Shown in pieces: positions 1 to 47,965 of a stretch of DNA of 64,000 nt. The position numbers and the translations under genes were made by a program. The DNA comes from Leidyana gryllorum EB-2025a (Eukaryota; Protista; Apicomplexa): positions 186,001-250,000 of the forward strand of contig JBLWGC010000051.1 of NCBI GenBank assembly GCA_048772705.1, in the 5' to 3' direction. The notes beneath the pieces are model-generated. The model searched no databases, was not told where the DNA came from, and worked only from the letters and a program-made list of their open reading frames with translations. The number at the start of each line of letters is the position of its first letter. Position 1 is the stretch's first letter.

Positions 1-8
1 AGGCTGCT

Positions 9-332
9 ATGGAAAGACAAAGAGTGACTGAGCTTAGTCAAAGATTATTGAACGAAGCTGCTCAAAACCAGAGCATTCTGGATGAAGTACTTAAGGCTCG
101 GGTTTCGGTGGTGGAGCACATGTCCCGACTCTTCCAAGAGCTGGACGCTGCTCAGCAAGGAGCTCAGGCTGAAGCTGCTGCTTTGGAGAAGAGCCTCGAA
201 GCAAACAAAGCAACCAGGAAGTCCAATCCAGGCATGGACGAAGCTCAGAAGAAGCTCAACAAGATCAAACATGACCGATGCATTTTCTTCGGATGCATTG
301 ATGTCCATCCTCCAGATCTGTTTGAACTCTAA
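9..332 (+). CDS. Hypothetical coiled-coil protein, possibly the 3' part of a gene starting before the window
   Basis: 107-aa ORF with heptad-like E/Q/L/K-rich composition; no recognisable motif. Confidence 0.4.
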   Translation: MERQRVTELSQRLLNEAAQNQSILDEVLKARVSVVEHMSRLFQELDAAQQGAQAEAAALEKSLEANKATRKSNPGMDEAQKKLNKIKHDRCIFFGCIDVHPPDLFEL

Positions 333-381
333 ATGCCCTTGTTCATTAACTGGAGATACCACAACCTAAATACTATATTCA

Positions 382-1470
382 TCAATCTTCCGCATCCCAA
401 GATGCAACCGATGCGTCACTGTCGACCTCGTCACTGCTCTCAAACCAGTTTGCTGGATCGGTAGACAACTGAGCCGGTCTATGCTTAGCCGACCCCCGGA
501 AGGCTGCCTTGATGATCTCGCAGCTTGCCTCGCTGTCGCTATCAGACTTCCCGTAATCTATGCCCTCTTCTTCTGTACGAGTAGTGATTGTATGAGTAAA
601 GCTGGCTGAAAACGGGTGTTGTCTCTTACCAGAGTAGGTGTCGCCGCGAGCTGCGGCGGGGCTATCTGGATCGTCGACGAACGATCCAGAACGAACAGGG
701 CCAATACCGTCCTTGGGACCAGTTGTGGCTGGGGGAGGTGGTGGTGATCGGCTTTGCCCAAAAGCAATGGCTGGAAGGTCCAGGTGCGCATATAAGCTGA
801 TTGGTGGCATTTCACCACTCAGTCTGAGTGCCTCATTTTCGAGGATTATTGGCTGCAGTTCGCGTAGAATAAGATCACGGCTCGACTCAACGTCCAGAGT
901 CGCGTCAGATTTGACGAGACTTGGATCTGGGCAATACAAAAAGTGCCTGTTATTTGATATATCATCAGCCATCGGATGATCCTCGGACGCCGTTGGTAAG
1001 GGGTCACGAAGCCTTCTCTTAACCCCAGTAAGTGATTGTGTTCTCACGAACTCGAAGTTGACCAGAGACGGGGGCAGCGATTGGCATTGTAGCATTAGAA
1101 CGTCTTGACGCCCATTCAGGTTGGGTCGATACGAGCGGGTCAGATATAGCCGTGGAATCTCTTTGATGGCCATATCAAAGTTTGCTCGTCTACTGGCAGC
1201 CTCAAAGGGGTCTTCAGACTTGAATATGACGGGAGCGACGTTGCAAGGGCGTGTGTTCATCCCTAGAGCGGTATCAAGCTCTTCTTCGGTCTCTCCAAGG
1301 AGGTCGTACTTCACAGGAACGCGATTCGCATAGCTGACGAATTCATTGGACGCCTCTTCCTGCCGCAATCTGGAAGCGGTGCGATAGTATTGTGCAAAAG
1401 TGGCAATTATATGACGAGGAGGCGGTGTTTCCTGAGACCAGCAAAGCTCAAGCAGCTTAACAGTAGTCAT
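382..1470 (-). CDS. Hypothetical protein (362 aa, acidic C-terminus)
   Basis: Long uninterrupted ORF; its ATG lies 12 bp downstream of the TRAPPC6 stop. Confidence 0.6.
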   Translation of the reverse strand: MTTVKLLELCWSQETPPPRHIIATFAQYYRTASRLRQEEASNEFVSYANRVPVKYDLLGETEEELDTALGMNTRPCNVAPVIFKSEDPFEAASRRANFDMAIKEIPRLYLTRSYRPNLNGRQDVLMLQCQSLPPSLVNFEFVRTQSLTGVKRRLRDPLPTASEDHPMADDISNNRHFLYCPDPSLVKSDATLDVESSRDLILRELQPIILENEALRLSGEMPPISLYAHLDLPAIAFGQSRSPPPPPATTGPKDGIGPVRSGSFVDDPDSPAAARGDTYSGKRQHPFSASFTHTITTRTEEEGIDYGKSDSDSEASCEIIKAAFRGSAKHRPAQLSTDPANWFESSDEVDSDASVASWDAED

Positions 1471-1482
1471 GTCAAAAAAAAG

Positions 1483-2204
1483 CTAAACCAGTACTGACAC
1501 GTGGAATGTACCTACAGCAGCATATGGTGGGCGTACAGAGCAGGCATTCTTACAGGCAGGGGGAACTTTGAGCTCTTGACTGACCACACATCGCAGTCCC
1601 AGGCCACCTAAAGCGCCTCTTACAATTCCACAGATAACAGCCGCTTGCGCGTCAGCACTTATCCGATAATTGGCTGTTCTGCCTGAGCTGAGATCTTCAA
1701 TGACCGAAGCATTGCCATCCAAGAGGGTTGGATCATATACAGGGTGTTTCTCGAGCCACGGAAGCTTCTCATCTAGTATGATGAAGCCGCCTCGTTTGTT
1801 GGTCTGTAGTCTTCCAGCCTGTTTACGGAAGAAGAACCCCCAAACCTCGCGGCATACAAACTTGAGAATATCTCGATGCTCTCGGATGCGTGGGCGATCA
1901 AGTACGAGCCTAATCGTTTGTGTGGTCTCTGAGGAAGTGACTTTAGTTACCGGTCTACAATTCGCGAACCCATATAGTAACCGCGCAGCTCGAGTTCCGC
2001 TTGAGCCTCGGCGATGTCCACCAGGGGGAGGGGTATGGAGGTTGGCTTGTGTGTTGTGGCAGCCGTCTCCTGTTGAGTGGATTCATCGTTGCTCCTGGGC
2101 AAGGTGGAGGCACGGCAGACTACCTCTACCAAAAGAGTGCGTAGATGGTGTACAACAGAGTAGGCGCATTGCTGTTGTTGAAGCGGAGCGTTTTCGGCCG
2201 CCAT
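1483..2204 (-). CDS. TRAPPC6: TRAPP complex subunit Trs33/TRAPPC6 (Bet3 family), 2 introns
   Basis: Spliced reading LELRGYYMGSRIVDR|LVLDRPRIREHRDILKFVCREVWGFFFRKQAGRLQTNKRGGFIILD...ICGIVRGALGGLG...PPAC|TFHV matches the Trs33 consensus; GT-AG introns near 1910-1950 and 1511-1552. Confidence 0.85.
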
Positions 2205-2304
2205 TTTGGGTATTTGGGTGTGAAAGAATCGTCATGTGACTGGCGAGTGGCACACGCAAAGCGTGCAATCACACATTTGAAGCTATTTACCGAAGTTACA
2301 GAAA

Positions 2305-2881
2305 ATGCTGTCACCATCACCGTCTCCTAGAAGCCAGCTGGGCGGTGCCGCGCTGAAGTTCTCACCCAAGGCTATTGCTGAACGTCAGCACCACAAGGCT
2401 AGAAAGAATAGAGAAATTGCCAGAGGGGCGAAAGCTCCTGAAATGAGCAAGTCACGACAGCGTGAACTGCACAAAAGTAAGACGGTGTCAGTGTCGGGCT
2501 ATTGTTCCATGGCGACGGTTCAGACTTTCACGACGGAAGACCACAGACTCAACGGATTACAGATGACGGCGACGCGCTCTGCGTGTGTGCCACGTTTCAC
2601 GATTGCGAGAAAGTCGTAAGTAACCTGGAGCCACGAGAGCGGTTGTATGGCTTTGTCAGGCAACGCTGCATCCAAAGAATACCTGTGACTATTGTTGGGG
2701 TATCCAGAGCAAGGTGCATCCGGACGGTGCCATCTACCGGTATTACCCAGCAGACCGTGGTTGGGAAGAGATACGCAACATCGTGAGTCATATGCGATTG
2801 TGGCCTCTTTATTTCTCTTTTTAGGCTGTGCAACTTCGAAGAGAGACGGATCTGCCCGATGAATTTGGTTTAAGCAAATAG
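2305..2881 (+). CDS. Small hypothetical Cys-containing protein, 3 introns
   Basis: In-frame splicing across gtaaga..cag, gtaagt..cag and gtgagt..tag gives ...LCVCATFHDCEKVATLHPKNTCDYCWGIQ...DEFGLSK*. Confidence 0.5.
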
Positions 2882-3009
2882 AGAGGGGTCGAATTGACCT
2901 CTGTCTGCTGAATTAATCTCCATTGAACCTAGTAGTAGCCATACAAAAATAAGTCTCCTTGAGCATTGAGCCAGTAATTTTTCCCTAACCCGTGGATTAT
3001 CCAACAAGT

Positions 3010-4787
3010 ATGCCCGAGCTTCCTTTCTCAACATTGACTTCATTCAATCGTCCGGTCGGTGCCATTAATCATAGCCGATCTGTTGTCACGGAGAGTAACA
3101 ATTTGTCTGCCACTCTGCTGGGTCGCTCGTCCAACAGCTTCGCAATGGGTACTCCTCACCCCTCTCCCATCATGGCCACAATAGGTGATCACCTCAGTTC
3201 GTGTGCTAGTAGTTGCGACGGTACTGAAGATATCACCTCCCCAACCCCCCAAAATAACGGGGTCGAAGCAGCCCCCCACTCTGAGCATGACGTGACTGAC
3301 CTGAAGGACATCGTGGAGTCAGGGCGGACCTTTTCCGACCTGTCGAACCCGGCGACCATTAGGAAAGTTTGCATGACGAAAATCCCAACTTGGGCATTGG
3401 CCGTTAAAGATGAAGATGTAAAGGTGTCTCAGATCATGGCGGGTCTGACCAACCAGCTGTTCAGAGTCCACCTCAAGAAAGAGTCTTGTCCAGGGATCAT
3501 TCCCCGTCAAGTCCTCTTTCGTGTGTACGGTTCCACTGTTGGCGATTTGTATGATTCCGCATTTGAACTTGAAGTGTTTAAAGTGCTCTCGAAGAACGAA
3601 TCAGCACCTAAATTAATTGCCGAGTTTCCGGTAAGTATCCAAGCCATCGCTGCAAGCCAATTTGATGCCTTTCTCAGGGTGGCCGGATTGAGGAGTACAT
3701 ATTGGGCCCTGCTCTATTGGTCAAGGATGCACGCAACCCGGCTGTTGCGTGCGCTGTAGCCACGATAGTGAGTATTACGCAGTGCATGATGGATAGATCA
3801 ATGCTTTTATACAGCTGGGGAAATTCCACAAGCTACAAGACCATGTGCCAGAGATCCAGAACTGGCGCTCGGAGGAAGCTTCCGTTTGGAAGAGCTTGCG
3901 TCGGTGGTCTGAGAAAGCTCTTGCTTTGTATCAAGTAGCTACGCGAACCTTAGATCAGGCCCATGAAACTGAAAGGCAGCAAAGTTGCGAGTCGGTGACT
4001 TCAACTGAGTCACTTGTGAAAGAGAAAGCCAGACGTATGAGTCAGGCTGCCAAACTAAACCTCGTCAAGAAGCTGGAACAGACGGGAATCGTTGAGATGT
4101 TTGAGGAGGCGCAGAGGTTGAAAAACCTCGTGCTTTCTCAGGACTCGCTCGACAATCCCATCACGAAAATTGCTTTCTGTCACAACGATGTTCAGGAAAA
4201 TAACATCCTTGTGGTAAGTTCAAGCTGTCCAATCAATTGCCATTATTACATAACTGCAGACGGGCACTCGTTTAAGGTTGATCGATTTTGAGTACTCTGA
4301 CTTCAACCACCCAGCTTTCGACATTGCTAACTTTCTGTGTGAAACTACCATTGACTACTGTGTCAACGGTAAGCGCACCCAAGCTACATCATCATTCTTC
4401 ACACCTATGCCGGCAGAGTTCCCCTTTTTCGCTCATGACACATCGATTGCCGCCTTCCCGAGCGAGGAGTTGATCAGACTCTTTGGATCGGTCTATCTGT
4501 CGGAGTTGCTCCAAACGTGTGTGATGCCGTCGGACAAGCGATTGGAGGCATTCGTTGCGTCCGTGTACCGCTTTGTCTTGACTAGCCACGCTGTGTGGGG
4601 TTTCTGGTCAATTATCAGGTAAGAAGAAGAAGCAAACAAGCGCAAAAGATGTGAACAAAATATGTGCAGGGCCCCTCAAGCAGCCACATCATCCGATTTC
4701 GACTTCTTGTTGTACGCTCAGAGTAGGTTCGAGGCGTACAGAACTTGGAAGTCCTTTTTGCTGACCAAAGGGTTGATCAAAGAATGA
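3010..4787 (+). CDS. Choline/ethanolamine kinase, multi-exon
   Basis: GLTNQLF, VLFRVYG, Brenner motif CHNDVQENNIL, IDFEYSDFNHPAFDIANF, SHAVWGFWSII. Confidence 0.93.
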
Positions 4788-4878
4788 GTTTTGGTTGATT
4801 TTGCCTTCGTGGAAGAATGAGTGGTGTATATCTTTAGGTGGTGTTATAAGAAACACTTGGGGGGATTATAGCACATGA

Positions 4879-6323
4879 TCATGCTAATGTTGTAGGTGAT
4901 GACGATGGCTGCTCGTCCGCTTCCTTTGTGGTTGAATCATCAGTCCCGCCACCCGGTGGCCGTGTTAATGGACCCATGAATTCAGGATAGTTAACATACA
5001 GCATTTGAGACTGCATCCAACTTGGATCACACGGCCAAAATGAGGTCAGTGAGGCCAAAGATGCAGGAAGGGATATACCGTCGTCAGCCTCGGTGGCTGT
5101 TCCGGGAGACTCCGCACTGCTCATCAACCTTGAACAACTTTCTGCAATTGTTTGACTTGTACGTTCGGTAAGTTCGGAGGGGCTGCATTGCTGCTGGCCG
5201 CCAGCCCACATGTTGTCGTCGCCTGTCCGATTGAACATGCGGTATCTTGAGGAGAGCGAAACCGGCTGTTGGTAAGGATCTGGTCCTTCCAAAGACTCTG
5301 CTTTCATTAATAGTGGATCACCTCCCGTCTTACAGCCCATGTTATCGGGCTTCATGACCAATCGACCTGGTGGTGGAGTCATGTTCGGGTACCCAAGTGG
5401 TGGTGTCCGCCAGCGTTGCCTCTCTGCCCAGTCTGAGCTGGGGAGAGGCCAGTCACTGGACCTTAACGACGAGTTCGGATACCCTCCGTGATTCATTGCT
5501 TGAAGCATTGTCATCATGTCAGGAGAATTGGGATCTAATCCCAGAGAAGAGATGTCGGGCGAACCAATTCCTCTCAGCTCACCTTGTCCCATCATCGCTC
5601 CCCCGTACATCATGGGGAAGGAAGCACCCGGTGGTAATTGGAAACGAGGTTGCATATACCCCCATGGCGTACACGCCTGACATGCGTTGCACGACTCACA
5701 AAGCACCCTTCGCTTACCATGTCCATCCCCCAGGTATGCGTGGGTGGTACTCTCCGTCGTATTTTACGATTTACCTCCCCCAGCGCTTTGCAGGTCATTG
5801 CAGGCTTGTACTTCCGCCGATTGTGTGGCGACGCGCCATTGGCATCTGCACGACCAATGCAGTCCCGTGAATCCCACGCAGGCACGTACCTCCACGCTTC
5901 CGTTGCACGCCGCCTAGCCTTTCGATTTCGGCTTGCTTCTTCACCTTGAATAGGTAAGCCTCGTGCCTCGCGACCTGCACCTCCAGTCTCTCAACAAGCC
6001 CCTTTCGGATGGGTGTGCTGACTCACGATTTCATTGCGATAAAACTTGGGATTGAAGTATTTGGTGTGACGTTGACCTTTCTCGTCTGTCCACTGAGCGG
6101 CCCATATCCCTCGACAGTTCTTATATACTCCCTTAATTTCGTTGTAGTTGAGCTCCTGGGGAGGTTGAACCAGGGACGTGGCCATCAACGGTGCATGTAC
6201 TCGCCCATCTTTGTTTAAAGCCCCATGAGTCCCCAGCTTGGGATCGAGGGAGCTAGGCATTGACGATCCAGATACTGATACTTCTTCCCACGTAGCGAGG
6301 TGCACGCGACTTAGGGGGTGCAT
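4879..6323 (-). CDS. ApiAP2 transcription factor (one AP2 domain, low-complexity C-terminus)
   Basis: IKGVYKNCRGIWAAQWTDEKGQRHTKYFNPKFY followed after an intron by the helix ARHEAYLFK; start codon uncertain (6323 or 6260). Confidence 0.8.
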
Positions 6324-12000: not shown

Positions 12001-15000
12001 TGATGCGCAAAGGCGCCCGGTGGTACAGTCTGGAAATGGCTGCCATCACAACACACACAGGAGCAGAGATCATTAAACGGGCCAAGTGAGAGTCCTTTCG
12101 ATATGCAGGTTTTCGCAATCTTTGAGATCAGGCAGATTTGCGATGGTATCGGCAGTGCGCTGGAACTCGATACTGACGGTGTCTGGACTCTTTTACCTCA
12201 GGGGTTCCCCGACAAGTACGATATCGACTTATGGGTTGATGGACAAGACGCTCCAATCAAGAAACGCTTCTCTTATCCCTGCTGGATGCTTAATGCAGAG
12301 GTTGAGAGGGTTTGGCTAAATCAGCAATATCATCGATTCGACGCGACCCGAGGCGAATACGCCGTCACTGCGGAGAACTCTATCTTTTTCGAGATCGATG
12401 GCCCCTACAAAGCCATGTTCTTGCCGGCTTCGGAAAAAGAAGATCAACAGCTCAAGAAGCGGTAGGTATTGCTGCTTTGCTCCCGGCCATCCGAGGTGTC
12501 ATCGGCCTCAGATATGCTGTCTTTGACTTTGACGACCACCTGGTGGAGCTTAAGGGGTTCGAGCTGAAACGACGTGGCGAATTACAGATCATCAAAATGT
12601 TCCAAGAAGAAGTATTCCCCGCATTTCTCCGCGGCAAATCTCGGCAAGAAATCTATGCCGCCGTGGGGGCTGTTGCCAAGTTGTGGCTTACCTTTCTCTC
12701 CACCAAAGGGAAGGCAATGACTGACTGGCACGACACGGTGGAGTTGCTGAGTGAGAGCAAAACCCTCAGCAAACCCGCTGTCTCGCAAGGCGCGTACAAA
12801 TCCACTGGAATTACGGCTGCCCACCGTCTGACCCAACTGTTGGACGATGAGACGTACATCAAAGACGCTGGTGTCAAGGCTGAATTCGTCTTGAGCGTTA
12901 TGCCGAGCGGGGCAGAGAAGACCAGTCGGGCCGTACCCGTGCTGGTCTTCGACAGCAAACCCGACATACGGGCAGCGTTCTTATCAAAGTGGACTTCCAG
13001 TCATTCTCAGGGAGAGTCGGAGGTGAAACAAGGACTCTTGAAAGCCACAGACCACATGTCCGGCAGCAATGAAAATCTGTGGCAGAAACACCCCCGAGAG
13101 TTCCTCCCTCCCCTTCTGGACTGGGAGTACTACAAGGAGAGATTGAGTGTTGCAATTCAGAAGATTGTGATCATTCCAGCGATAGCACAGTTGCTGAGTA
13201 ACCCCGTTCCAGAGATCCAGCTACCTGAATGGCTGCGGCGGCGGGTCGATGCGAGCCGAGGCCGTCAGCAAAAACTACAATTCGCTCGCATAGGCCGTCC
13301 CGACAAAGCAATCACCACCAAAGAGACCGACACGTCGGACACTGAGCACAGTTCTGCCTCTACCCGTGCTGAGAGCACAGGACCAGCTGCCAAGACTGTC
13401 GCGCTCAAAAGCTCCGACCGTAGGCTACCAAAGGTCGGACCGGATGACCATCAAAGTTTGGCTGCATTCGTCAAAGCAATGCGCCCCCTCTGGGAAACCT
13501 ATAGAAGAGTGAGTTGCCAAATGTCTCAAACTCCCTCTCTCTCACTCACTCGCCTCTATCAAAGGGTCTCAAGCTGGAAGATCGTTTTTGTGTGCGAGGG
13601 CAGAATGATCACGTGTCGTCGCAGAAGGACACTTTGTTGTTATTGGACCTGAATCCGAGGTCTCTGCTGGCTGCCGATGGGACTCTGTGGGCCACGGTGA
13701 AACCACTCGATAGCCATCGGACGTATAGGACGCTTGTGCATCACCCACGTACACTCTACGTTGTGGGTGACATAGATCAAGCTCGACTAAGAGAGAAGAT
13801 TGAGTGTCTGGACGAGAAAGGGAAGGGCCATGTGGCATTTGGGTCCCAAATCGTCACGATCTTCGGAACCTCAAATCCTGTGACTCTCACCACTCTAACA
13901 TTGCCCACCCCCACATTGGCTCAACTGCATCATCTGTTTCTGGATGGCACTTTGATGAAAGGAGGCGAGGGACAGATTCTGAATATTCCGTTTCGTACAT
14001 CATTCATGTCTCTGGTAGAGCTCGGTGAGCCCCGGACTGGAGGTCCTCAATCACACAGACGTCTGATTGTAGGCTCCTACGTGCGACTGGCCGAGACGCC
14101 GTGGGGGAGTCCCTGTCTTCAGCGTCAAGACGCCTTGTTTCGATCGAAAATAGGAGACGCTTCATTCGCAATGGACGTCGTCGTTGACACTCTTCAACCA
14201 CAGGGCAGGTATGACTTGACGGTAATGTGTTGAATACTAACTGTATCGCCTGCGCGCGGGGATCAGGTACACATGTGTTCATGTCGCGGTCGATAGCTTG
14301 GTCAACACCTCACGCATAGCTCTGGGAGCTACCGTAACACACGAGACGAGGCGCGTACCGACTGCGGCTAGTCTCAAGACTCTATCGCGTACATTGTTGC
14401 GATTCCTGGCGGACACAAACGACTCTGCGGACACCAGCAACATCAATATCCATATTAGTCCGCCGCTGATTGTCAGAGGAGTGGAGGGGATCATCAATGA
14501 GATTTCTCGCCTAAGTCGGTTCGAAGCCATGCAGTGTCGACCGCCCATGGCCCACTTGATCGGCTATCCCGAACAACTCGCATCGGTGAGTCTCCTATTT
14601 ATCAGCTTCCCGACGACACTATGTGCTGCAGCAAATCGACTACGCTTTGGAGGACTCAAGTATTCGTGTTGGTGATCTCAAGCCAGGCAGTGTTCGCGTG
14701 CTGTTCGAAGTTGAACCTGTTGCAGTGAGTGGTCAGGTTGTGGACCGTGAAGGGTGAGACAGCAAAAATGGACTGACATTGATGTGACGAATCACTCTTG
14801 ACAGCGCCTCTCTGAGTCGGGTGGTGGAAGCATTCAAGTGGACGTACACACGTGGCAAGCGCAGTTGTCTGTACCAAACTGACCTTCCAATGGCAGTTGC
14901 CTGGCGTACAGCGCTTCAAAAGACTGACGATACCAATCTCATGTTCGACATCAACATTGCGAAGCGACTGATGGAACGAGACGAGATTTTCAGGTCCCCA

Positions 15001-16804
15001 TGTGATGAAGGCCCGTACAAAACCGCTGTGGACATCTTGGAGAGAGACACTTTGACACCACTCCTGGGGGGCCCAGTACATGACGGAACACAGATGAAGG
15101 AAATGAGTCGTATTCTCCCAGACATTGCTTCATATGTACCTCGCATTATGACTTCTGGGGTGCATCGGGATCAAATAGTGCACTTCCGCTTCACCCGTCC
15201 CGTAAGCAACGTCGATGGAATTTCTCCCAAGTTGTGATGTGCCAGGCTGCACTCCACGCTTTGTTGCGTCTGCCCCAACTTGCTCGGATGTATCATATAC
15301 CAGTGTCCGATGCCAGGATACTGACACAAGATCGCGCGTACTTTGTGGACAAGAAGCGGTCTGACACGGACCAAAAGGTTAAGACACTACAGGCGGACCC
15401 AACAGTGATCCAACTGATGTTCATTAGAGACACATTGCTCAAGAGCCATCTCATACACGTAAGTGGCCGAGTCACCCGCGGATTCATTTGGTTGAAAAAC
15501 GTACAGTCGCACACCCAGTGTCTCTCCTGGCTGTTGGATCAGACCGCCACCATCCATGACGATGTCTGGGCGCTCGAACTTTTCTTCAAATGGACTCCGT
15601 TGCTCCTGCGAGCCCTCGTTCTGCAATGTGCCGCAATATCGAAGAAGGTCGGACAACCCATATCCCCTGTGGCTATATGGCCTGACGGTGCTCTCGTGAA
15701 GTTCCCTACGAGTGCCCCCAATAGAGCTCGACAAGCGGCAGAGGTCTTGAGGGCAAAGTTGGAGGGCGACAGCGTGTTGGCAGGCTTGGTCGATCCAGAT
15801 CACTTGGCACAGTATCGACATGGGGTGCAACTGGACTACAGAAACTGTTTATACATCGATAACGCTGGAGAGATTGGACATTTGACTCTTCCAGCCCTCA
15901 ACAGCCTCCCAGACGCTCTGGCTGGACGCATTGAGGAGTGAGCAATCAATTAGATGGGCTCTGAGTGATTTATTTCGTATAGGTTGGTAGTCCAATTCCT
16001 AGAGGAGCCCTTGAGGCTTGCGGCAACTAGGACTGAGAAGCGCACACCAAGTCGCGCAGAGATTCAAGGTGCTGCGCGGGACTACATATTCGGAGAATGG
16101 ACAGAGAAGGTACAGATCTCACCAGCGGACTTGGACACAGACGATCTTATGGCCTTCCAAGAGTGTATCGGTTCGCTGTCAATTGCTCGCTCCAAGATAG
16201 CTCCACTGAGCTGCGCTAACAATCTTCTACTCAGACTTACAAGTTTGGATCCCGCCTTCTCAGAGTGTGAAGAGGAAGCCAAAAAAGCGTGGTGTGGTGA
16301 GGCCAACCTCCAAGAGGATGATTTTGCCTTCGAGCAACCTTACTCCGCTACCATCCCCATCGTCCTGAGTCATCTGGTCTGCGATAACTGCCACCATGTT
16401 GAGAGCATTGACCTGTCTGAGGGCGCTCCGTCCTGCCTGTAAGTCACACAACTCCGCCATTGATGGGGATTCGATCAGGAAATGTGGGACGAGTCATCGC
16501 GAAGAAGCCATAGAAGCCCGGCTGGTCACCATTGTCGAGAGCGCGATAATGGCCTGGCAAGCTCGTGACGTTATCTGCGGAAAGTGCAAACAGCTGCGGC
16601 ATCTCAGAACCGCTATATCGTGCAACTGCGGAGGGCGTTTTGAGTATCAGACAACAGAAATTGATCTTCGGTACGGGCATAGGAGAATGAATACCTGTCA
16701 ATATCTATTTCAGCCTGCTGTTCGCCTCTTTGCGTCCGATCTGCGACGAAAATGGATTCCAATGGCTCCAATCAGTCCTCCTCTGGGGCGAAGATATGCT
16801 CTAA
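9085..16804 (+). CDS. POL2: DNA polymerase epsilon catalytic subunit A, many short introns
   Basis: Exo[83 protein letters not shown]-terminal Cys zinc/Fe-S motifs (CDNC; CGKC..CNC). Confidence 0.96.
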
Positions 16805-17101
16805 CCAGTCTGTTGAACTCCAGAACCACCAAATAGCAACACTCATTCCAGCAAAAGGCCTTATCGCAAGGCACTGCCACATGGTGTTCCGCCCCTCTCC
16901 TCAGTCTAGCTATGACACTACCGCAAACCGCAAAGCCCCAACCCTGCAGAAAAAGGTAGTCGGAGTGCAGCAAAATCTACATTTCTAATTATAAAGTTGA
17001 CCGCCTGGCAGGTTGAATGCATGAGAATGATGTACAGCTTTACAGTTGTTGTAGGAATACTCACAGTTGAGCGGCGCTCGGCCAACTTAAGCAGTAAGGC
17101 A

Positions 17102-17983
17102 GTCAGAGTGGTAGTGCATGATGTATCCTCGTCACGGATGTCGGAGGAAATGGGTGAAATCAAATCATCATTGTGAGACATGAATATCTTAGCCAAGATG
17201 GTCAGAGTGGTAGTGCATGATGTATCCTCGTCACGGACGTCGGAGGAAATGGGTGATATCAAATCATCATTTCTGGCATGAATGTATTAGTCGATAGTCA
17301 GAGTGGTAGTGCATGATGTATCCTCGTCACGGACGTCGGAGGAAATGGGTGATATCAAATCATCATTTCTGGCATGAACGAATCGGTCAAGATAGTCAGA
17401 GTGGTAGTGCATGATGTATCCTCGTCACGGACGTCGGAGGAAATGGGTGATATCAAATCATCATTTCTGGCATGAATTAATTAGTCGAGATAGTCAGAGT
17501 GGTAGTGCATGATGTATCCTCGTCACGGACGTCGGAGGAAATGGGTGATATCAAATCATCATTTCTGGCATGAATTAATTAGTCGAGATAGTCAGAGTGG
17601 TAGTGCATGATGTATCCTCGTCACGGACGTCGGAGGAAATGGGTGATATCAAATCATCATTTCTGGCATGAATTAATTAGTCGAGATAGTCAGAGTGGTA
17701 GTGCATGATGTATCCTCGTCACGGACGTCGGAGGAAATTGGTGATATCAAATCATCACATTAGTCGAACCACACACAGCACACACGGTACTTAGCAGCTA
17801 TGATTTGTCGTCGAAATCAGAGTGGTAGTGCATGATATATCCTCTTCACAGACGTCGGACAAGATTGGGTGATATCAAAACATCATCTTACATGAATGCA
17901 TTAGTCAAGATAGTCAGAGTGGTAGTGCATGATGTATCCTCGTCACAGACGTCGGAGGAAATTGGGTGATATCAAATCATCAT
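17102..17983 (-). ncRNA. Tandem array of 9 box C/D snoRNA genes, U33/snR55-like
   Basis: Units start on + at about 17102, 17201, 17297, 17395, 17493, 17591, 17689, 17816, 17913 (period 96-99 bp, one longer spacer). Minus-strand unit: ATGATGA (C) tttgatatcacccatttcct CCGA (D') cgtcc GTGACGA (C') ggatacat CATGCACTACCACT CTGA (D); the guide pairs with conserved SSU GGUGGUGGUGCAUG. Confidence 0.85.
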
Positions 17984-18027
17984 CCGAAGGGGATTACGGC
18001 ATAGCAGAAGAACATTAGATAGGCACC

Positions 18028-18058
18028 TTGCATGGCACGTGCACGTTGTGAAAAATTT
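18028..18058. promoter_or_regulatory. Putative bidirectional promoter core between the snoRNA array and mscL
   Basis: TTGCATGGCACGTGCACG packs TGCATG, CACGTG and GTGCAC, followed by AAAAATTT, inside a 91-bp divergent spacer. Confidence 0.4.
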
Positions 18059-18074
18059 GAATAGGTTTGTGGAA

Positions 18075-18689
18075 ATGGGGTGCGGCTGTTGTGCAGGTTT
18101 TCGAGATTTTATTTTCCGAGGAAATGTTGTAGACATCGCTGTTGGCCTGGTGGTTGGTGCAGCATTCAAGGATGTCGTGGACGCTTTAGTTGCCGATTTG
18201 CTGACTCCCTTAATCGGCATATTCGGAGACATACCCGACTTCTCGAAAGAAACCTTCTCTATCAGAGGTAGCACCTTTACTTATGGGCACTTCGTGAATG
18301 TGGTCATTTCTTTCCTTATTCTGGCTCTCGTCATCTATTGCTGTGTCATCATGCCGATGAACAAGATCAATCATATGAGAGGGCTCGACAAGCCGACGAC
18401 TGAACCATGTCCCTTCTGCTGTAGCGACATTGGTCTTGAGGCGAAAGTCTGTCCTAATTGTACTCGTGATTTGCCAGTGAAACCCCCAGTAGAAGAGTCA
18501 GTGGATGTGAAAAAGAAATCGGGCAGTTTGGGGGACAGATTGATGAGTCTGACGGGGCGAAAGTCCGCTGAGAAGGCACCTGAGCCAGCCGCAAAGCAAG
18601 AAGGGAATCCGATTGCGGACGGAATGGCGGCGAAGGCAGATCAACAAGCAGCCTCTTCTGGGGTCAAAACTCAACCTCCACCGAAGTGA
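18075..18689 (+). CDS. mscL: Large-conductance mechanosensitive channel MscL with C-terminal zinc ribbon, intronless
   Basis: FRDFIFRGNVVDIAVGLVVGAAFKDVVDALVADLLTPLIG (S1/TM1), YGHFVNVVISFLILALVIY (TM2), CPFC..CPNCT. Confidence 0.93.
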   Translation: MGCGCCAGFRDFIFRGNVVDIAVGLVVGAAFKDVVDALVADLLTPLIGIFGDIPDFSKETFSIRGSTFTYGHFVNVVISFLILALVIYCCVIMPMNKINHMRGLDKPTTEPCPFCCSDIGLEAKVCPNCTRDLPVKPPVEESVDVKKKSGSLGDRLMSLTGRKSAEKAPEPAAKQEGNPIADGMAAKADQQAASSGVKTQPPPK

Positions 18690-18720
18690 TCATTTTCCTT
18701 TTTGACAAACTGTCCGATGC

Positions 18721-20235
18721 ATGGGGTATGAGCTCCTGGAGTTTTCAAGCGGCGTAGTGCTGCTGTTGGCACTTGTCTTGGTAGCGGGGCGTAAAGGCGC
18801 AAATCAGATTGGTCCACCAGCTTGCTTGGCACTGTTGATCTATGTGTACGCGGCACCATCCACTTATCTGGCTGACCCTCCGATGGTCACCATCAAGATG
18901 GCTTTGGCGTCGGGTTTTGCCGTGGCCGCTTTGGAGAGAAGTGGAGGGATGGACTACTGTCAGTATTGGCAATTAAAACTACTACAACGATGGCCCAGAC
19001 TAACGGGCTGTATTGCCCCTTGTCTGGCTTTCCTAAATGGTCTGCTGGGCGACAACCTACAGCTCACAAACCGTATACTTGTTGATGTGGCACACACATA
19101 TCGCGCGCGATCTCAGCCTTGTGGCCACGTGGTGGCCACTGGAATAGTCGCGGGTTTTCTAGCGAATACCTGTCTGCCTCTAGGTGCTCCACTACTCTAC
19201 ATGGCTGACACGCTCCCTCTTTTGAGCCGGGGGCACCGCAGCTATCGAGATATGTGTTTCCGCCTGCTTTGCGGGAACTTGCTGGGCATTCTGACAACCA
19301 TATTACTGCTGGAGGGCGTGACACGAATGTGTATCTGGATGAAGCTCAAGCAAGGCAAGCTTACAGAGCATTCGCAGGCTGCACAGGACGGTGATCAATA
19401 CTCGACTGACCTGGAGGGTGTCGTATTGGGGCACACTCTTGAAGCTTGCGCCGCCGTTGTCCAGAGCGCCCCCCCCGCCGTTGGAGACGTCAGTCCCGAG
19501 TCGACCACAACCAGAGAGCTGCGCAGCGAGCCTGTTCTGACTACAGTCCGAATAGAGGAACGAGATGTTGTTGTCACCGACTCGTCTCTCAACAGGGATG
19601 AAAAGCGTGGTAACGGGATGGCTGCAATTACCTTCGTCGGGCTCTGGACAACCCTATTGTTATTTCAGTTGATCGTTCCAGTGGAACGTATGACTGCTGT
19701 AAGGACGTCAAGATACGATGCTGCGCTCTGCTGGATGATGGTGATGACGGTGGGAGTGTGTTGGGTTGGACGCACCCCGGTTGCCACCGTTTTTGCCAGC
19801 CCAGTCGCGGGCGGGATAGGTGTCGGTGTGCTGACGGTTATGGGCATGGCGTGGCTTACGGGGACTGTTTATGGTATACTCCTGCGGCAGGTCACGTTCC
19901 AACATAATGCTTCCCCTAATCAACTACCGCCTGTGCTGTACATGTTGGTGATCGGATCAGCGGGAGCATTGTTCTTCTCTCCTGCATCGGCGGCTGTGTT
20001 GGCAACAGAACTGTACGGCCGCAGCTCGTTCTCGGACAAATGGCTTCTGACTTCATTTCCTCTATTCGCCTTGTTCTTGGTATGGGGATTGACTCCGCCA
20101 ATGGAGGGCGTTGCGGCTGCTGTCGGGCCCCAGGAGATCTCATTGCACCGACCCGGGGGTTACCACTCGTTCCTCGTCCCCTCCGTCCTCTCGATCGCCT
20201 TCACGTGTCAGTTTGTGTATATATTGGCTTGCTAA
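18721..20235 (+). CDS. Divergent anaerobic C4-dicarboxylate transporter (DcuA/DcuB family), intronless
   Basis: Multi-TM protein; LLLALVLVAGRKG, ALERSGGMDY..KLLQRWPRLTGCIAP, GVLTVMGMAWL and C-terminal HSFLVPSVLSI align with recalled DcuA/B blocks. Confidence 0.72.
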   Translation: MGYELLEFSSGVVLLLALVLVAGRKGANQIGPPACLALLIYVYAAPSTYLADPPMVTIKMALASGFAVAALERSGGMDYCQYWQLKLLQRWPRLTGCIAPCLAFLNGLLGDNLQLTNRILVDVAHTYRARSQPCGHVVATGIVAGFLANTCLPLGAPLLYMADTLPLLSRGHRSYRDMCFRLLCGNLLGILTTILLLEGVTRMCIWMKLKQGKLTEHSQAAQDGDQYSTDLEGVVLGHTLEACAAVVQSAPPAVGDVSPESTTTRELRSEPVLTTVRIEERDVVVTDSSLNRDEKRGNGMAAITFVGLWTTLLLFQLIVPVERMTAVRTSRYDAALCWMMVMTVGVCWVGRTPVATVFASPVAGGIGVGVLTVMGMAWLTGTVYGILLRQVTFQHNASPNQLPPVLYMLVIGSAGALFFSPASAAVLATELYGRSSFSDKWLLTSFPLFALFLVWGLTPPMEGVAAAVGPQEISLHRPGGYHSFLVPSVLSIAFTCQFVYILAC

Positions 20236-47388: not shown

Positions 47389-47440
47389 GAGTCGTTGCGT
47401 CCGTCTTTTCTGTCTACGGCTGATGATTTTTCCTGTGGAA

Positions 47441-47813
47441 TCAGACATCTAAGGAATCAGCTATGGAGGAGAAAGACGGCGAGTCTATCTCTTCAGCTGC
47501 AACCACTGCGAATATGGGTAAGTTGTGTCATCAGATGAGGCACGATGATGTGACAATGAAACAGAATGAAGCAAAGACTTACAATTATCAGACATCTAAG
47601 GAATCAGCTATGGAAAAGAAGGACGGCGAGTCGATCTTTTCAGCCGTAACCACTGCGAATATGGGTAAGTTGTGTCATCATATGAGAGCACAAAATGTAG
47701 GGGAAACATAGTGTGATAATCAGACATCTAAGGAATCAGCTATGGAAAAGAAGGACGGCGAGTCGATCTTTTCAGCCGTAACCACTGCGAATATGGGTAA
47801 GTTGTGTCATCAT
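47441..47813 (-). ncRNA. U14: Three tandem U14 snoRNA genes (47441-47534, 47588-47681, 47720-47813)
   Basis: Each has box C TGATGA, domain A ATTCGCAG, an internal stem, and domain B plus box D TTCCTTAGATGTCTGA. Confidence 0.93.
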
Positions 47814-47832
47814 ATGAACAAGGGTCTTATAG

Positions 47833-47941
47833 TCAGACCAGGATGAAACTGGATGTATCAGCTTATTAAAGAGTAGTGTCTTCACTGAAGTCCACGCAAG
47901 TGCGGGATTGTCAGTAACACAGACCAAATCTTAATCATCAT
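47833..47941 (-). ncRNA. U18: U18-like box C/D snoRNA
   Basis: ATGATGA...TTGGTCTGTGTTA CTGA (D')...GTGAAGA (C')...CTGA; guide pairs with LSU AACACGGACCAA (one G-U). Confidence 0.85.
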
Positions 47942-47965
47942 AAGAGGGAGGCACGTACATGGATG

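What the first reader, a model, noticed from the sequence alone, without database searches (positions are those of the whole stretch)
17102..17983. CRISPR-looking array is a nine-copy amplification of one C/D snoRNA
Seen: nine units with a conserved 69-nt core separated by more variable spacers of about 27-30 nt (one about 59 nt). Conservation stops at the box C and box D motifs on the minus strand. Several central copies are identical including spacers; outer copies drift (copy near 17816 has box C ATGATGT). Known: C/D snoRNAs have C, D', C', D in this order. Inference: a polycistronic guide-RNA gene amplified by unequal crossover, a high copy number for a genome that has otherwise squeezed out non-coding DNA, suggesting dosage selection or a role beyond simple methylation.
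Basis: partly seen in the sequence, partly recalled or inferred. Interest (0 to 1): 0.8.

Follow-up and report, generated by a model that had tools for sequence, protein, structure and literature searches.

The report
Nine-copy tandem C/D snoRNA gene array
The repeat array is most likely nine head-to-tail genes for one small nucleolar guide RNA that directs methylation of a conserved site in 18S ribosomal RNA; the kind of element is ordinary, and only the copy number is unusual for a small protist genome.

Summary
Window 17103-17983 carries nine units with a 69-70 nt conserved core. Spacers are 27-30 nt, with one of 58 nt.

On the minus strand each core reads box C, a 20-nt guide, D' (CCGA), C' (GUGACGA), a 22-nt guide and box D (CUGA). 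The D guide pairs over 15 bp with the genome's own 18S rRNA at the site served by U33/snR55, and 0 of 300 shuffled guides score as well. All nine units give sub-threshold Rfam hits to that clan, on the minus strand only.

Cores differ pairwise by 1.6% and their spacers by 21%, so the box-C-to-box-D segment is under constraint. The unit occurs nowhere else in the 15.5-Mb assembly.

The guide has one extra base before box D compared with yeast, human, plant and Plasmodium homologues, so the +5 rule predicts Gm beside the canonical Um. The same spacing is in Tetrahymena TtnuCD21 and 11 metagenome contigs.

The D' guide has no significant target and varies between copies.

No reads were available, so expression, polycistronic processing and true copy number are untested. 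There is no evidence for a role beyond methylation.

This is a new member of a known kind. The scan's first readers noted smaller snoRNA arrays elsewhere in this genome.

The parts
17103..17171 (-). unit 1, the 3'-most in the putative transcript. C/D snoRNA core, box C to box D, with 2 changes from the consensus: one in the D' guide and one in the D'-C' loop.
   Evidence: Rfam snR55 25.5 bits
17202..17270 (-). unit 2, core identical to the consensus
   Evidence: Rfam SNORD33 25.8 bits
17298..17366 (-). unit 3, core identical to the consensus
   Evidence: Rfam snR55 26.7 bits
17396..17464 (-). unit 4, core identical to the consensus
   Evidence: Rfam snR55 26.7 bits
17494..17562 (-). unit 5, the representative unit. 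Box C AUGAUGA 17556-17562; D' guide 17536-17555; D' box CCGA 17532-17535; loop 17527-17531; C' box GUGACGA 17520-17526; D guide 17498-17519; box D CUGA 17494-17497.
   Evidence: Rfam snR55 26.7 bits, E 0.0039 when the unit is searched alone
17592..17660 (-). unit 6, core identical to the consensus
17690..17758 (-). unit 7, box C GUGAUGA, one C-to-A change in the D' guide
17759..17816 (.). odd 58-nt spacer holding a (TG)n-like tract. It separates an older pair (units 8-9) from the block of units 1-7.
17817..17886 (-). unit 8, the most diverged copy, with 8 changes. Box C is AUGAUGU, C' is GUGAAGA and the D' guide is altered. The 15-nt D guide and box D are intact.
   Evidence: Rfam SNORD33 29.1 bits
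17914..17983 (-). unit 9, the 5'-most in the putative transcript. One base is inserted in the D' guide and one base is changed in the loop.
   Evidence: Rfam snR55 27.6 bits
17984..18074 (.). 91-bp gap between the first box C and the ATG of the divergent MscL gene. Inferred site of a shared or bidirectional promoter; not shown.
   Evidence: position only
18075..18689 (+). flanking gene: MscL-family channel, divergent from the array
   Evidence: Pfam PF01741, E 4.9e-29
12312..16836 (+). flanking gene: DNA polymerase epsilon catalytic subunit, convergent with the array, read in several frames
   Evidence: Pfam PF22634, E 8.2e-53 on the first ORF; ORF list

Best explanation
[quoted passage not shown] It is the only source in this genome of the U33/snR55-type guide for 18S rRNA.

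Shown from sequence:
- The boxes, their order and their spacing.
- A 15-bp guide-target duplex with the genome's own SSU rRNA, positions 1240-1254.
- Constraint on exactly the box-C-to-box-D segment.
- A single locus in the assembly.
- A fibrillarin gene in the genome.

Inferred:
- RNA polymerase starts in the 91-bp gap shared with the divergent MscL gene and makes a precursor of about 0.9-1 kb.
- Snu13, Nop56, Nop58 and fibrillarin assemble on each C/D and C'/D' motif.
- Exonucleases, possibly with an endonuclease, remove the 27-58 nt spacers up to the snoRNP boundaries.
- Each mature RNA pairs with the 5' strand of 18S helix 34 (helix assignment from memory) and directs 2'-O-methylation. The strict +5 rule puts the methyl group on G1244, one nucleotide 5' of the U methylated in yeast, human, Arabidopsis and Plasmodium.
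- The D' guide is probably a decayed or orphan element.
- The array grew by unequal crossing-over of a 98-nt unit. Units 8-9 are older and units 4-7 are very recent.
- Several copies have been kept intact by selection, which fits a need for dose.
For: - Boxes: alignment of the nine units shows invariant UGAUG, CCGA, GUGA, the D guide and CUGA.
- D'/C' stem: the 4 nt before D' and the 3 nt after C', together with the adjoining box bases, form a 5-bp Watson-Crick stem (UCCUC/GAGGA), as expected for a C'/D' K-loop (read directly).
- Rfam: all nine units hit the SNORD33/snR55 clan CL00054 over the full model length on the minus strand, at 25.5-29.1 bits. No snoRNA family hits the plus strand of the array.
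- Guide: the D guide pairs with SSU 1240-1254 over 15 bp (12 Watson-Crick, 3 G-U), starting at position 1 from box D. 0 of 300 shuffled guides reach this score.
- Constraint: pairwise divergence is 1.6% in cores and 21% in spacers. Units 2-4 have identical 69-nt cores, while their spacers differ at 4-12 of about 29 positions. The D guide plus box D show 1 difference in 234 cells; the D' guide shows 7 in 189.
- Single locus: a DNA search and a guide-plus-box-D pattern search of the whole assembly find only these nine copies.
- Machinery: fibrillarin is encoded in the genome.
- Relatives: the same guide and box-D spacing occur in the Rfam TtnuCD21 consensus and in 11 metagenome contigs that each carry a complete C/D unit.
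Against: - There is no RNA evidence. No sequencing run was listed, so strand, size, processing and expression are inferred.
- Rfam scores are below the gathering cut-offs of 44 and 50 bits, and the whole-window gathering search gave nothing.
- No canonical 4-6 bp terminal stem abuts boxes C and D. At best there are 3 offset base pairs, and the fold has z = 0.51.
- The copies are too alike to give covariation.
- The predicted methylated base (G) differs from the canonical U and is not mapped in any organism I could check.
- Copy number rests on one assembly with three perfect 98-nt repeats.
Confidence: 0.85

Rival explanations
1. It is a real snoRNA gene, but the high copy number is a neutral by-product of unequal crossing-over. 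One or a few copies suffice, and the rest are redundant and will decay. There is no dosage selection and no extra function.
For: Units 4-7 share identical spacers, so part of the array is very young. Unit 8 already carries 8 changes, including changes in box C and C'. Tandem duplication of small-RNA genes looks like a general habit of this genome.
Against: Units 2, 3 and 4 keep identical 69-nt cores although their spacers have diverged by 14-40%. That is hard to get without selection, or very precise conversion, on each copy. Even unit 8 keeps the 15-nt D guide and box D intact.
Confidence: 0.3
2. The array is real, but nine is not the true copy number. Perfect 98-nt repeats were collapsed or expanded in assembly.
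For: Three consecutive units are 100% identical over 294 bp. Other parts of the assembly look imperfect: a fold-back rDNA contig, an SSU copy that breaks at position 1235, and a polymerase gene split over frames.
Against: Six of the eight spacers are distinguishable from their neighbours, which anchors at least six or seven units. No read data could be consulted.
Confidence: 0.2
3. It is a non-functional minisatellite or an array of snoRNA pseudogenes that makes no stable RNA.
For: No expression data. No terminal stem. Rfam scores are below threshold.
Against: Divergence is 13-fold lower in exactly the box-C-to-box-D segment. The guide to a universally methylated 18S region is invariant. This is the only locus in the genome that carries this guide, and homologues of this snoRNA are retained in yeast, human, Arabidopsis and Plasmodium (PMC2656528, PMC8583080).
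Confidence: 0.06
4. It is a CRISPR-like or plus-strand element, meaning a repeat-spacer array or a plus-strand small RNA.
For: Only the look of it: conserved 69-nt repeats alternate with spacers of about 29 nt.
Against: The 'spacers' are homologous to each other, and three are identical. The genome is eukaryotic, with 18S, 5.8S and 28S rRNA and U2 and U6 snRNAs. No RNA family hits the plus strand of the array. The period of 98 is not a multiple of 3, and the only ORF over it is a 114-aa mechanical one.
Confidence: 0.01

Closest known systems
SNORD33 (U33) / snR55 / Z10, Rfam clan CL00054; Arabidopsis AtU33 / AtsnoR34
   Same: Box C/D architecture and the 3' guide core CAUGCA..ACCA next to box D. 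It pairs with the GGUGGUGCAUGG stretch of 18S. These RNAs guide yeast Um1269, human Um1326 and Arabidopsis Um1273 (PMC8583080).
   Different: There is one extra base (ACCAC-U-CUGA against ACCA-U-CUGA), so position +5 faces the G just 5' of that U. Scores are 25-29 bits against gathering cut-offs of 44 and 50. The D' guide does not match the LSU site that AtU33 (Gm3292) and PFS1 (Gm3308) are assigned to. There are nine tandem copies instead of one or two.
Plasmodium falciparum PFS1 (PMC2656528)
   Same: Apicomplexan homologue of snR55/U33, intergenic and of similar length. By eye its D' guide matches ours at 12 of 19 positions in register with D', including ACCCA, and its C' reads UGAAGA as in unit 8 here.
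   Different: PFS1 has the canonical spacing (+5 = U, Tm1370) and is single copy. That paper states that most malaria-parasite snoRNAs are single copy.
Tetrahymena thermophila TtnuCD21 (Rfam RF02297; PMC3273799)
   Same: Its 3' end is identical: CACCACUCUGA.
   Different: The D' guide is different; in Tetrahymena it guides U6 Um23, which was verified experimentally. The score is only 19.7 bits against a cut-off of 70. It is not reported as a tandem array.
Reiterated snoRNA clusters of trypanosomatids and Euglena; polycistronic multi-isoform clusters of plants and Chlamydomonas
   Same: Independent, intron-free clusters of closely spaced snoRNA genes, repeated in tandem and processed from polycistronic precursors (as summarised in PMC2656528, PMC2784804 and PMC7671301).
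   Different: Those repeat units usually hold several different snoRNAs. Here one snoRNA species is repeated nine times with very short spacers, in a genome of only 15.5 Mb.
Mammalian SNORD115 / SNORD116 tandem arrays (PMC2766290)
   Same: Many tandem copies of one C/D snoRNA species.
   Different: Those are intronic in a long imprinted host transcript and lack an rRNA target. This one has a clear rRNA guide and no sign of a host gene.
Ostreococcus tauri snoRNA complement (PMC7671301)
   Same: A compact genome of similar size, with independent polycistronic C/D clusters.
   Different: In O. tauri all but three snoRNAs are single copy, and the authors attribute this to genome compaction. The array here goes against that trend.

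Membership tests
box C/D snoRNA | Box C (RUGAUGA) near the 5' end | tested here: met
   AUGAUGA or GUGAUGA in 8 of 9 units, AUGAUGU in unit 8
box C/D snoRNA | Box D (CUGA) near the 3' end | tested here: met
   CUGA invariant in 9 of 9 units
box C/D snoRNA | Internal D' and C' boxes in the order C, D', C', D with workable spacing | tested here: met
   CCGA and GUGACGA, both degenerate forms, are 5 nt apart. The guides are 20 and 22 nt. A 5-bp stem flanks D'/C'. CCGA is also used as D' in P. falciparum PFS9 (PMC2656528).
box C/D snoRNA | Guide of at least 10 bp complementary to rRNA or snRNA, ending next to box D or D', with the target at +5 | tested here: met
   The D guide forms 15 bp with the genome's own SSU 1240-1254 from position 1; 0 of 300 shuffles match it. 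The D' guide forms only 12 bp with LSU 284-295; 17 of 300 shuffles do as well, and units 7-9 lose it.
box C/D snoRNA | Short terminal stem bringing boxes C and D together | tested here: not met
   No 4-6 bp stem abuts the boxes in any unit. The MFE fold shows none, z = 0.51. Many protist, yeast and plant snoRNAs rely on external or weak stems, so this lowers the claim only a little.
box C/D snoRNA | Stable RNA of about 60-100 nt bound by fibrillarin, Nop56, Nop58 and Snu13 | not testable with these tools
   No sequencing run was listed. A fibrillarin gene is present in the genome.
SNORD33 / snR55 (Rfam RF00133, RF00472) | Score at or above the curated gathering threshold | tested here: not met
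   25.5-29.1 bits against 44 and 50
SNORD33 / snR55 (Rfam RF00133, RF00472) | Guide places the canonical 18S U (yeast U1269) at +5 from box D | tested here: not met
   One extra base puts G1244 at +5 and the canonical U1245 at +6. It works on the same helix but is predicted to mark the neighbouring base.
polycistronic tandem snoRNA cluster | Several snoRNA genes on the same strand, closely spaced, without individual terminators | tested here: met
   Nine units on one strand with spacers of 27-58 nt. No T-run follows box D in any unit.
polycistronic tandem snoRNA cluster | A common precursor transcript | not testable with these tools
   No reads available
CRISPR array | Identical repeats separated by unrelated spacers, in a prokaryote, usually with cas genes | tested here: not met
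   The spacers are homologous to each other and the genome is eukaryotic.

The most novel reading that the evidence does not exclude
The one-base-longer guide defines a second, widespread class of the U33/snR55 snoRNA. It is seen in this organism, in Tetrahymena and in several uncultured eukaryotes. This class would methylate the G next to the canonical U in 18S helix 34. In this parasite-like compact genome the RNA has no terminal stem and no back-up locus, so it is kept at nine copies because ribosome assembly needs it in high dose, either for methylation or as a folding chaperone of helix 34.
Probability: 0.12. Interest if true: 0.55.

Novelty: new member of a known kind. Interest (0 to 1): 0.3.

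Why it matters
- It gives a confident annotation for 0.9 kb that would otherwise be scored as a minisatellite or mistaken for a CRISPR array.
- It adds a clear case of tandem amplification of a single modification guide in a small, gene-dense protist genome. Published work on Plasmodium and Ostreococcus reports almost only single-copy snoRNAs (PMC2656528, PMC7671301).
- The core-versus-spacer contrast is a simple internal test of function that can be reused on the other arrays noted in this genome.
- The shifted guide makes a concrete prediction that can be checked: Gm at SSU 1244 rather than Um at 1245.

Tried and rejected
- Rfam at gathering thresholds on the whole window gave no match.
- Sequencing runs: none was listed for 16600-18700. 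Read laying was therefore not run, and strand, ends and copy number could not be checked.
- A search of the genome with RF01960 failed twice with tool errors. I located the rRNA with a 16-nt pattern instead.
- The look-up of encoding contigs with the MscL product found nothing on record, so the organism was not identified.
- D' guide target:
  - The best hit is LSU 284-295 (12 bp). It is not significant (17 of 300 shuffles) and is lost in units 7-9.
  - The canonical U33 D' site in the LSU (GAGCUGGGU at 2818) would pair with two mismatches and a wobble at +5. I judged this by eye.
  - U6 and U2 gave no duplex of 8 bp or more covering +5 for the standard D' guide. The only U2 row came from a mis-parsed unit 1.
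- Single-strand folding of either strand was uninformative.
- The Tetrahymena paper's supplement listing the box D target of TtnuCD21 is not held.
- A 7-mer (ACGTGCC) is shared upstream of this array and of the U14/U18 cluster. I judged it compatible with chance.
- I considered whether Ostreococcus Ot-CDsno53 (18S U1231, its most abundant snoRNA) is the homologous guide. I could not check this.
- The big protein searches, structure prediction and complex prediction were not needed.

Full report
**Observation**

- Tandem Repeats Finder gives a 98-nt period over 17101-17757.
- The repeat finder lists nine copies spaced 96-99 nt apart, with one gap of 127-128 nt.
- Taking box C and box D on the minus strand as boundaries, the nine cores are 69 nt, or 70 nt in the two at the high-coordinate end. 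Spacers are 30, 27, 29, 29, 29, 29, 58 and 27 nt.
- Three 98-nt units (17391-17684) are identical including spacers.

**Anatomy**

On the minus strand every unit reads, in order:
- box C (A/G)UGAUGA
- a 20-nt stretch (the D' guide)
- CCGA (D')
- five bases (loop)
- GUGACGA (C')
- a 22-nt stretch (the D guide)
- CUGA (box D)

The four bases before D' and the three after C', together with the adjoining box bases, can form a 5-bp Watson-Crick stem (UCCUC/GAGGA). That is what a C'/D' K-loop needs; I read it directly from the alignment.

No canonical terminal stem abuts boxes C and D, and single-strand folding is uninformative.

The period is not a multiple of three, and only a mechanical 114-aa ORF crosses the array.

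**Family evidence**

- At gathering thresholds Rfam finds nothing in the window.
- With permissive thresholds, all nine units hit the SNORD33/snR55 clan over the full model length, on the minus strand, at 25.5-29.1 bits. The cut-offs are 44 and 50.
- No snoRNA family hits the plus strand of the array.
- The matches are carried by box C, box D and the guide CAUGCACUACCA next to box D.

**Target**

- I located the genome's rRNA genes with a 16-nt pattern and confirmed them with Rfam.
- The D guide pairs without gaps over 15 bp (12 Watson-Crick, 3 G-U) with SSU 1240-1254 (GGUGGUGGUGCAUGG), beginning at the base next to box D.
- None of 300 shuffled guides scores as well against SSU plus LSU.
- This is the stretch whose U is methylated under U33/snR55 guidance in yeast (U1269), human (U1326) and Arabidopsis (U1273) (PMC8583080), and by PFS1 in P. 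falciparum (PMC2656528).

**The one-base shift**

- Compared with the Rfam consensus of SNORD33 and snR55, and with PFS1, the guide here has one extra base before box D (ACCAC-U-CUGA).
- Position +5 therefore faces G1244, and the canonical U1245 sits at +6.
- It is not peculiar to this genome. The Rfam consensus of Tetrahymena TtnuCD21 ends in the same CACCACUCUGA.
- A metagenome scan for a C/D unit with that exact ending returned 11 contigs with about eight distinct sequences, of 31-61% GC. Each carries a complete C/D unit in single copy.
- So there seems to be a second, widespread spacing class of this guide. Which base it methylates is not known to me: the Tetrahymena supplement is not held, and Arabidopsis shows no Gm at that position.

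**The D' guide**

- Its best rRNA match is 12 bp with LSU 284-295. This is not significant (17 of 300 shuffles).
- That match exists only in units 1-6. Units 7, 8 and 9 each carry a different change in the middle of it.
- By eye it resembles the D' guide of PFS1 in register with D' (12 of 19 positions, including ACCCA). PFS1's D' guide is assigned to a conserved LSU G.
- Against this genome's copy of that site (LSU 2818) it would have two mismatches and a wobble at +5.
- I read it as a decayed or orphan guide.
- One AT-rich metagenome homologue (L021) shares CACCCAUUU, but in a different register relative to its D' box.

**Constraint**

This is the strongest internal evidence for function.
- Pairwise divergence is 23/1455 (1.6%) in cores and 131/615 (21%) in the spacers next to them.
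- Units 2, 3 and 4 have identical 69-nt cores, while their spacers differ at 4-12 of about 29 positions.
- Within the core, the D guide plus box D show one difference in 234 cells, against 7 in 189 for the D' guide.
- Even unit 8, with eight changes, keeps the 15-nt D guide and box D.
- Conversion tracts would not be expected to stop at the boxes, so purifying selection on each of several copies is the simplest reading. That gives indirect support to a dosage requirement.

**Distribution and context**

- The 98-nt unit and the guide-plus-box-D pattern, with any spacing of 0-3 bases, occur only at this locus in the 15.5-Mb, 237-contig assembly. It is therefore not a dispersed satellite, and there is no second, canonical U33 gene.
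- The array lies in a 1.24-kb gap between the 3' end of the DNA polymerase epsilon gene (plus strand, convergent) and an MscL-family gene (plus strand, divergent, ATG at 18075).
- Only 91 bp separate the first box C from that ATG, so a shared promoter region is the likeliest start. This is inferred.
- Fibrillarin is encoded in the genome.
- Multi-copy small-RNA genes are common here: 8 U6 genes, 7-11 U2 genes, and a cluster of three U14-like units plus a U18-like unit at 47437-47946 of this window.
- Other first-reader notes list 3-4-copy snoRNA arrays on other contigs. I did not check those. Nine is the largest number noted so far.

**Mechanism proposed**

1. A minus-strand precursor of about 1 kb is made from the gap next to MscL.
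2. Core snoRNP proteins bind each C/D and C'/D' motif.
3. The spacers are trimmed away.
4. The nine near-identical RNAs pair with 18S and direct fibrillarin to G1244, or to U1245 if the rule is relaxed.

The sequence features and the constraint are shown. Transcription, processing, protein binding and methylation are inferred from what is established for box C/D snoRNPs.

**Comparison and novelty**

- Tandemly reiterated snoRNA genes and polycistronic clusters are well known in trypanosomatids, Euglena, plants and Chlamydomonas. Long arrays of one C/D species are known in mammals (PMC2656528, PMC2784804, PMC7671301, PMC2766290).
- What is less usual is the setting. Plasmodium snoRNAs are mostly single copy (PMC2656528). 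In the compact Ostreococcus genome all but three snoRNAs are single copy, which the authors ascribe to compaction (PMC7671301).
- The finding is therefore a new member of a known kind, of modest interest.
- Nothing supports a role beyond methylation.

**Limits**

- No sequencing run was listed.
- The organism was not identified.
- Copy number depends on one assembly that shows oddities elsewhere.

Noticed in passing
window 47437-47946 (-): Second snoRNA cluster: three tandem U14-like units (21.7-28.3 bits) and one U18-like unit (25.3 bits), all below the Rfam cut-offs.
   Followed up: partly
L013 (G000:C157) 1-5031: About 20 tRNA genes and a 5S rRNA gene are packed into 5 kb directly beside the 3' end of the LSU rRNA gene.
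   Followed up: no
L012 / L013 (G000:C157), SSU region: The SSU copy on C157 matches the complete SSU of C73 only from SSU position 1235 onward (99.6%). The upstream part is only weakly SSU-like. It could be a second rRNA type, a truncated copy or a mis-join. The break lies a few bases from the snoRNA target.
   Followed up: partly
L010 / L011 / L014 (G000:C73, 7459 bp): SSU, 5.8S and the first ~80 nt of LSU are followed by the same elements in reverse orientation. This is either a palindromic rDNA unit or a fold-back assembly artefact.
   Followed up: no
G000, several contigs: Eight U6 genes and 7-11 U2 genes in a 15.5-Mb genome. Small-RNA genes are generally multi-copy here.
   Followed up: no
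window 12312-16836 (+): The DNA polymerase epsilon gene is read in at least six successive, partly overlapping frames. This points to many short introns or to frameshift errors in the assembly.
   Followed up: no
L021 4378-4442 (+) and about 70 nt downstream: An AT-rich metagenome contig carries a single-copy homologue with the same D guide spacing and a shared CACCCAUUU in its D' guide. A different C/D snoRNA follows it.
   Followed up: partly
window 18075-18689 and 18721-20235 (+): An MscL-family channel with an MGCGCC N-terminus, followed by a DcuA/DcuB-family transporter. Both families are confirmed by Pfam. These are unusual genes for a eukaryote.
   Followed up: partly
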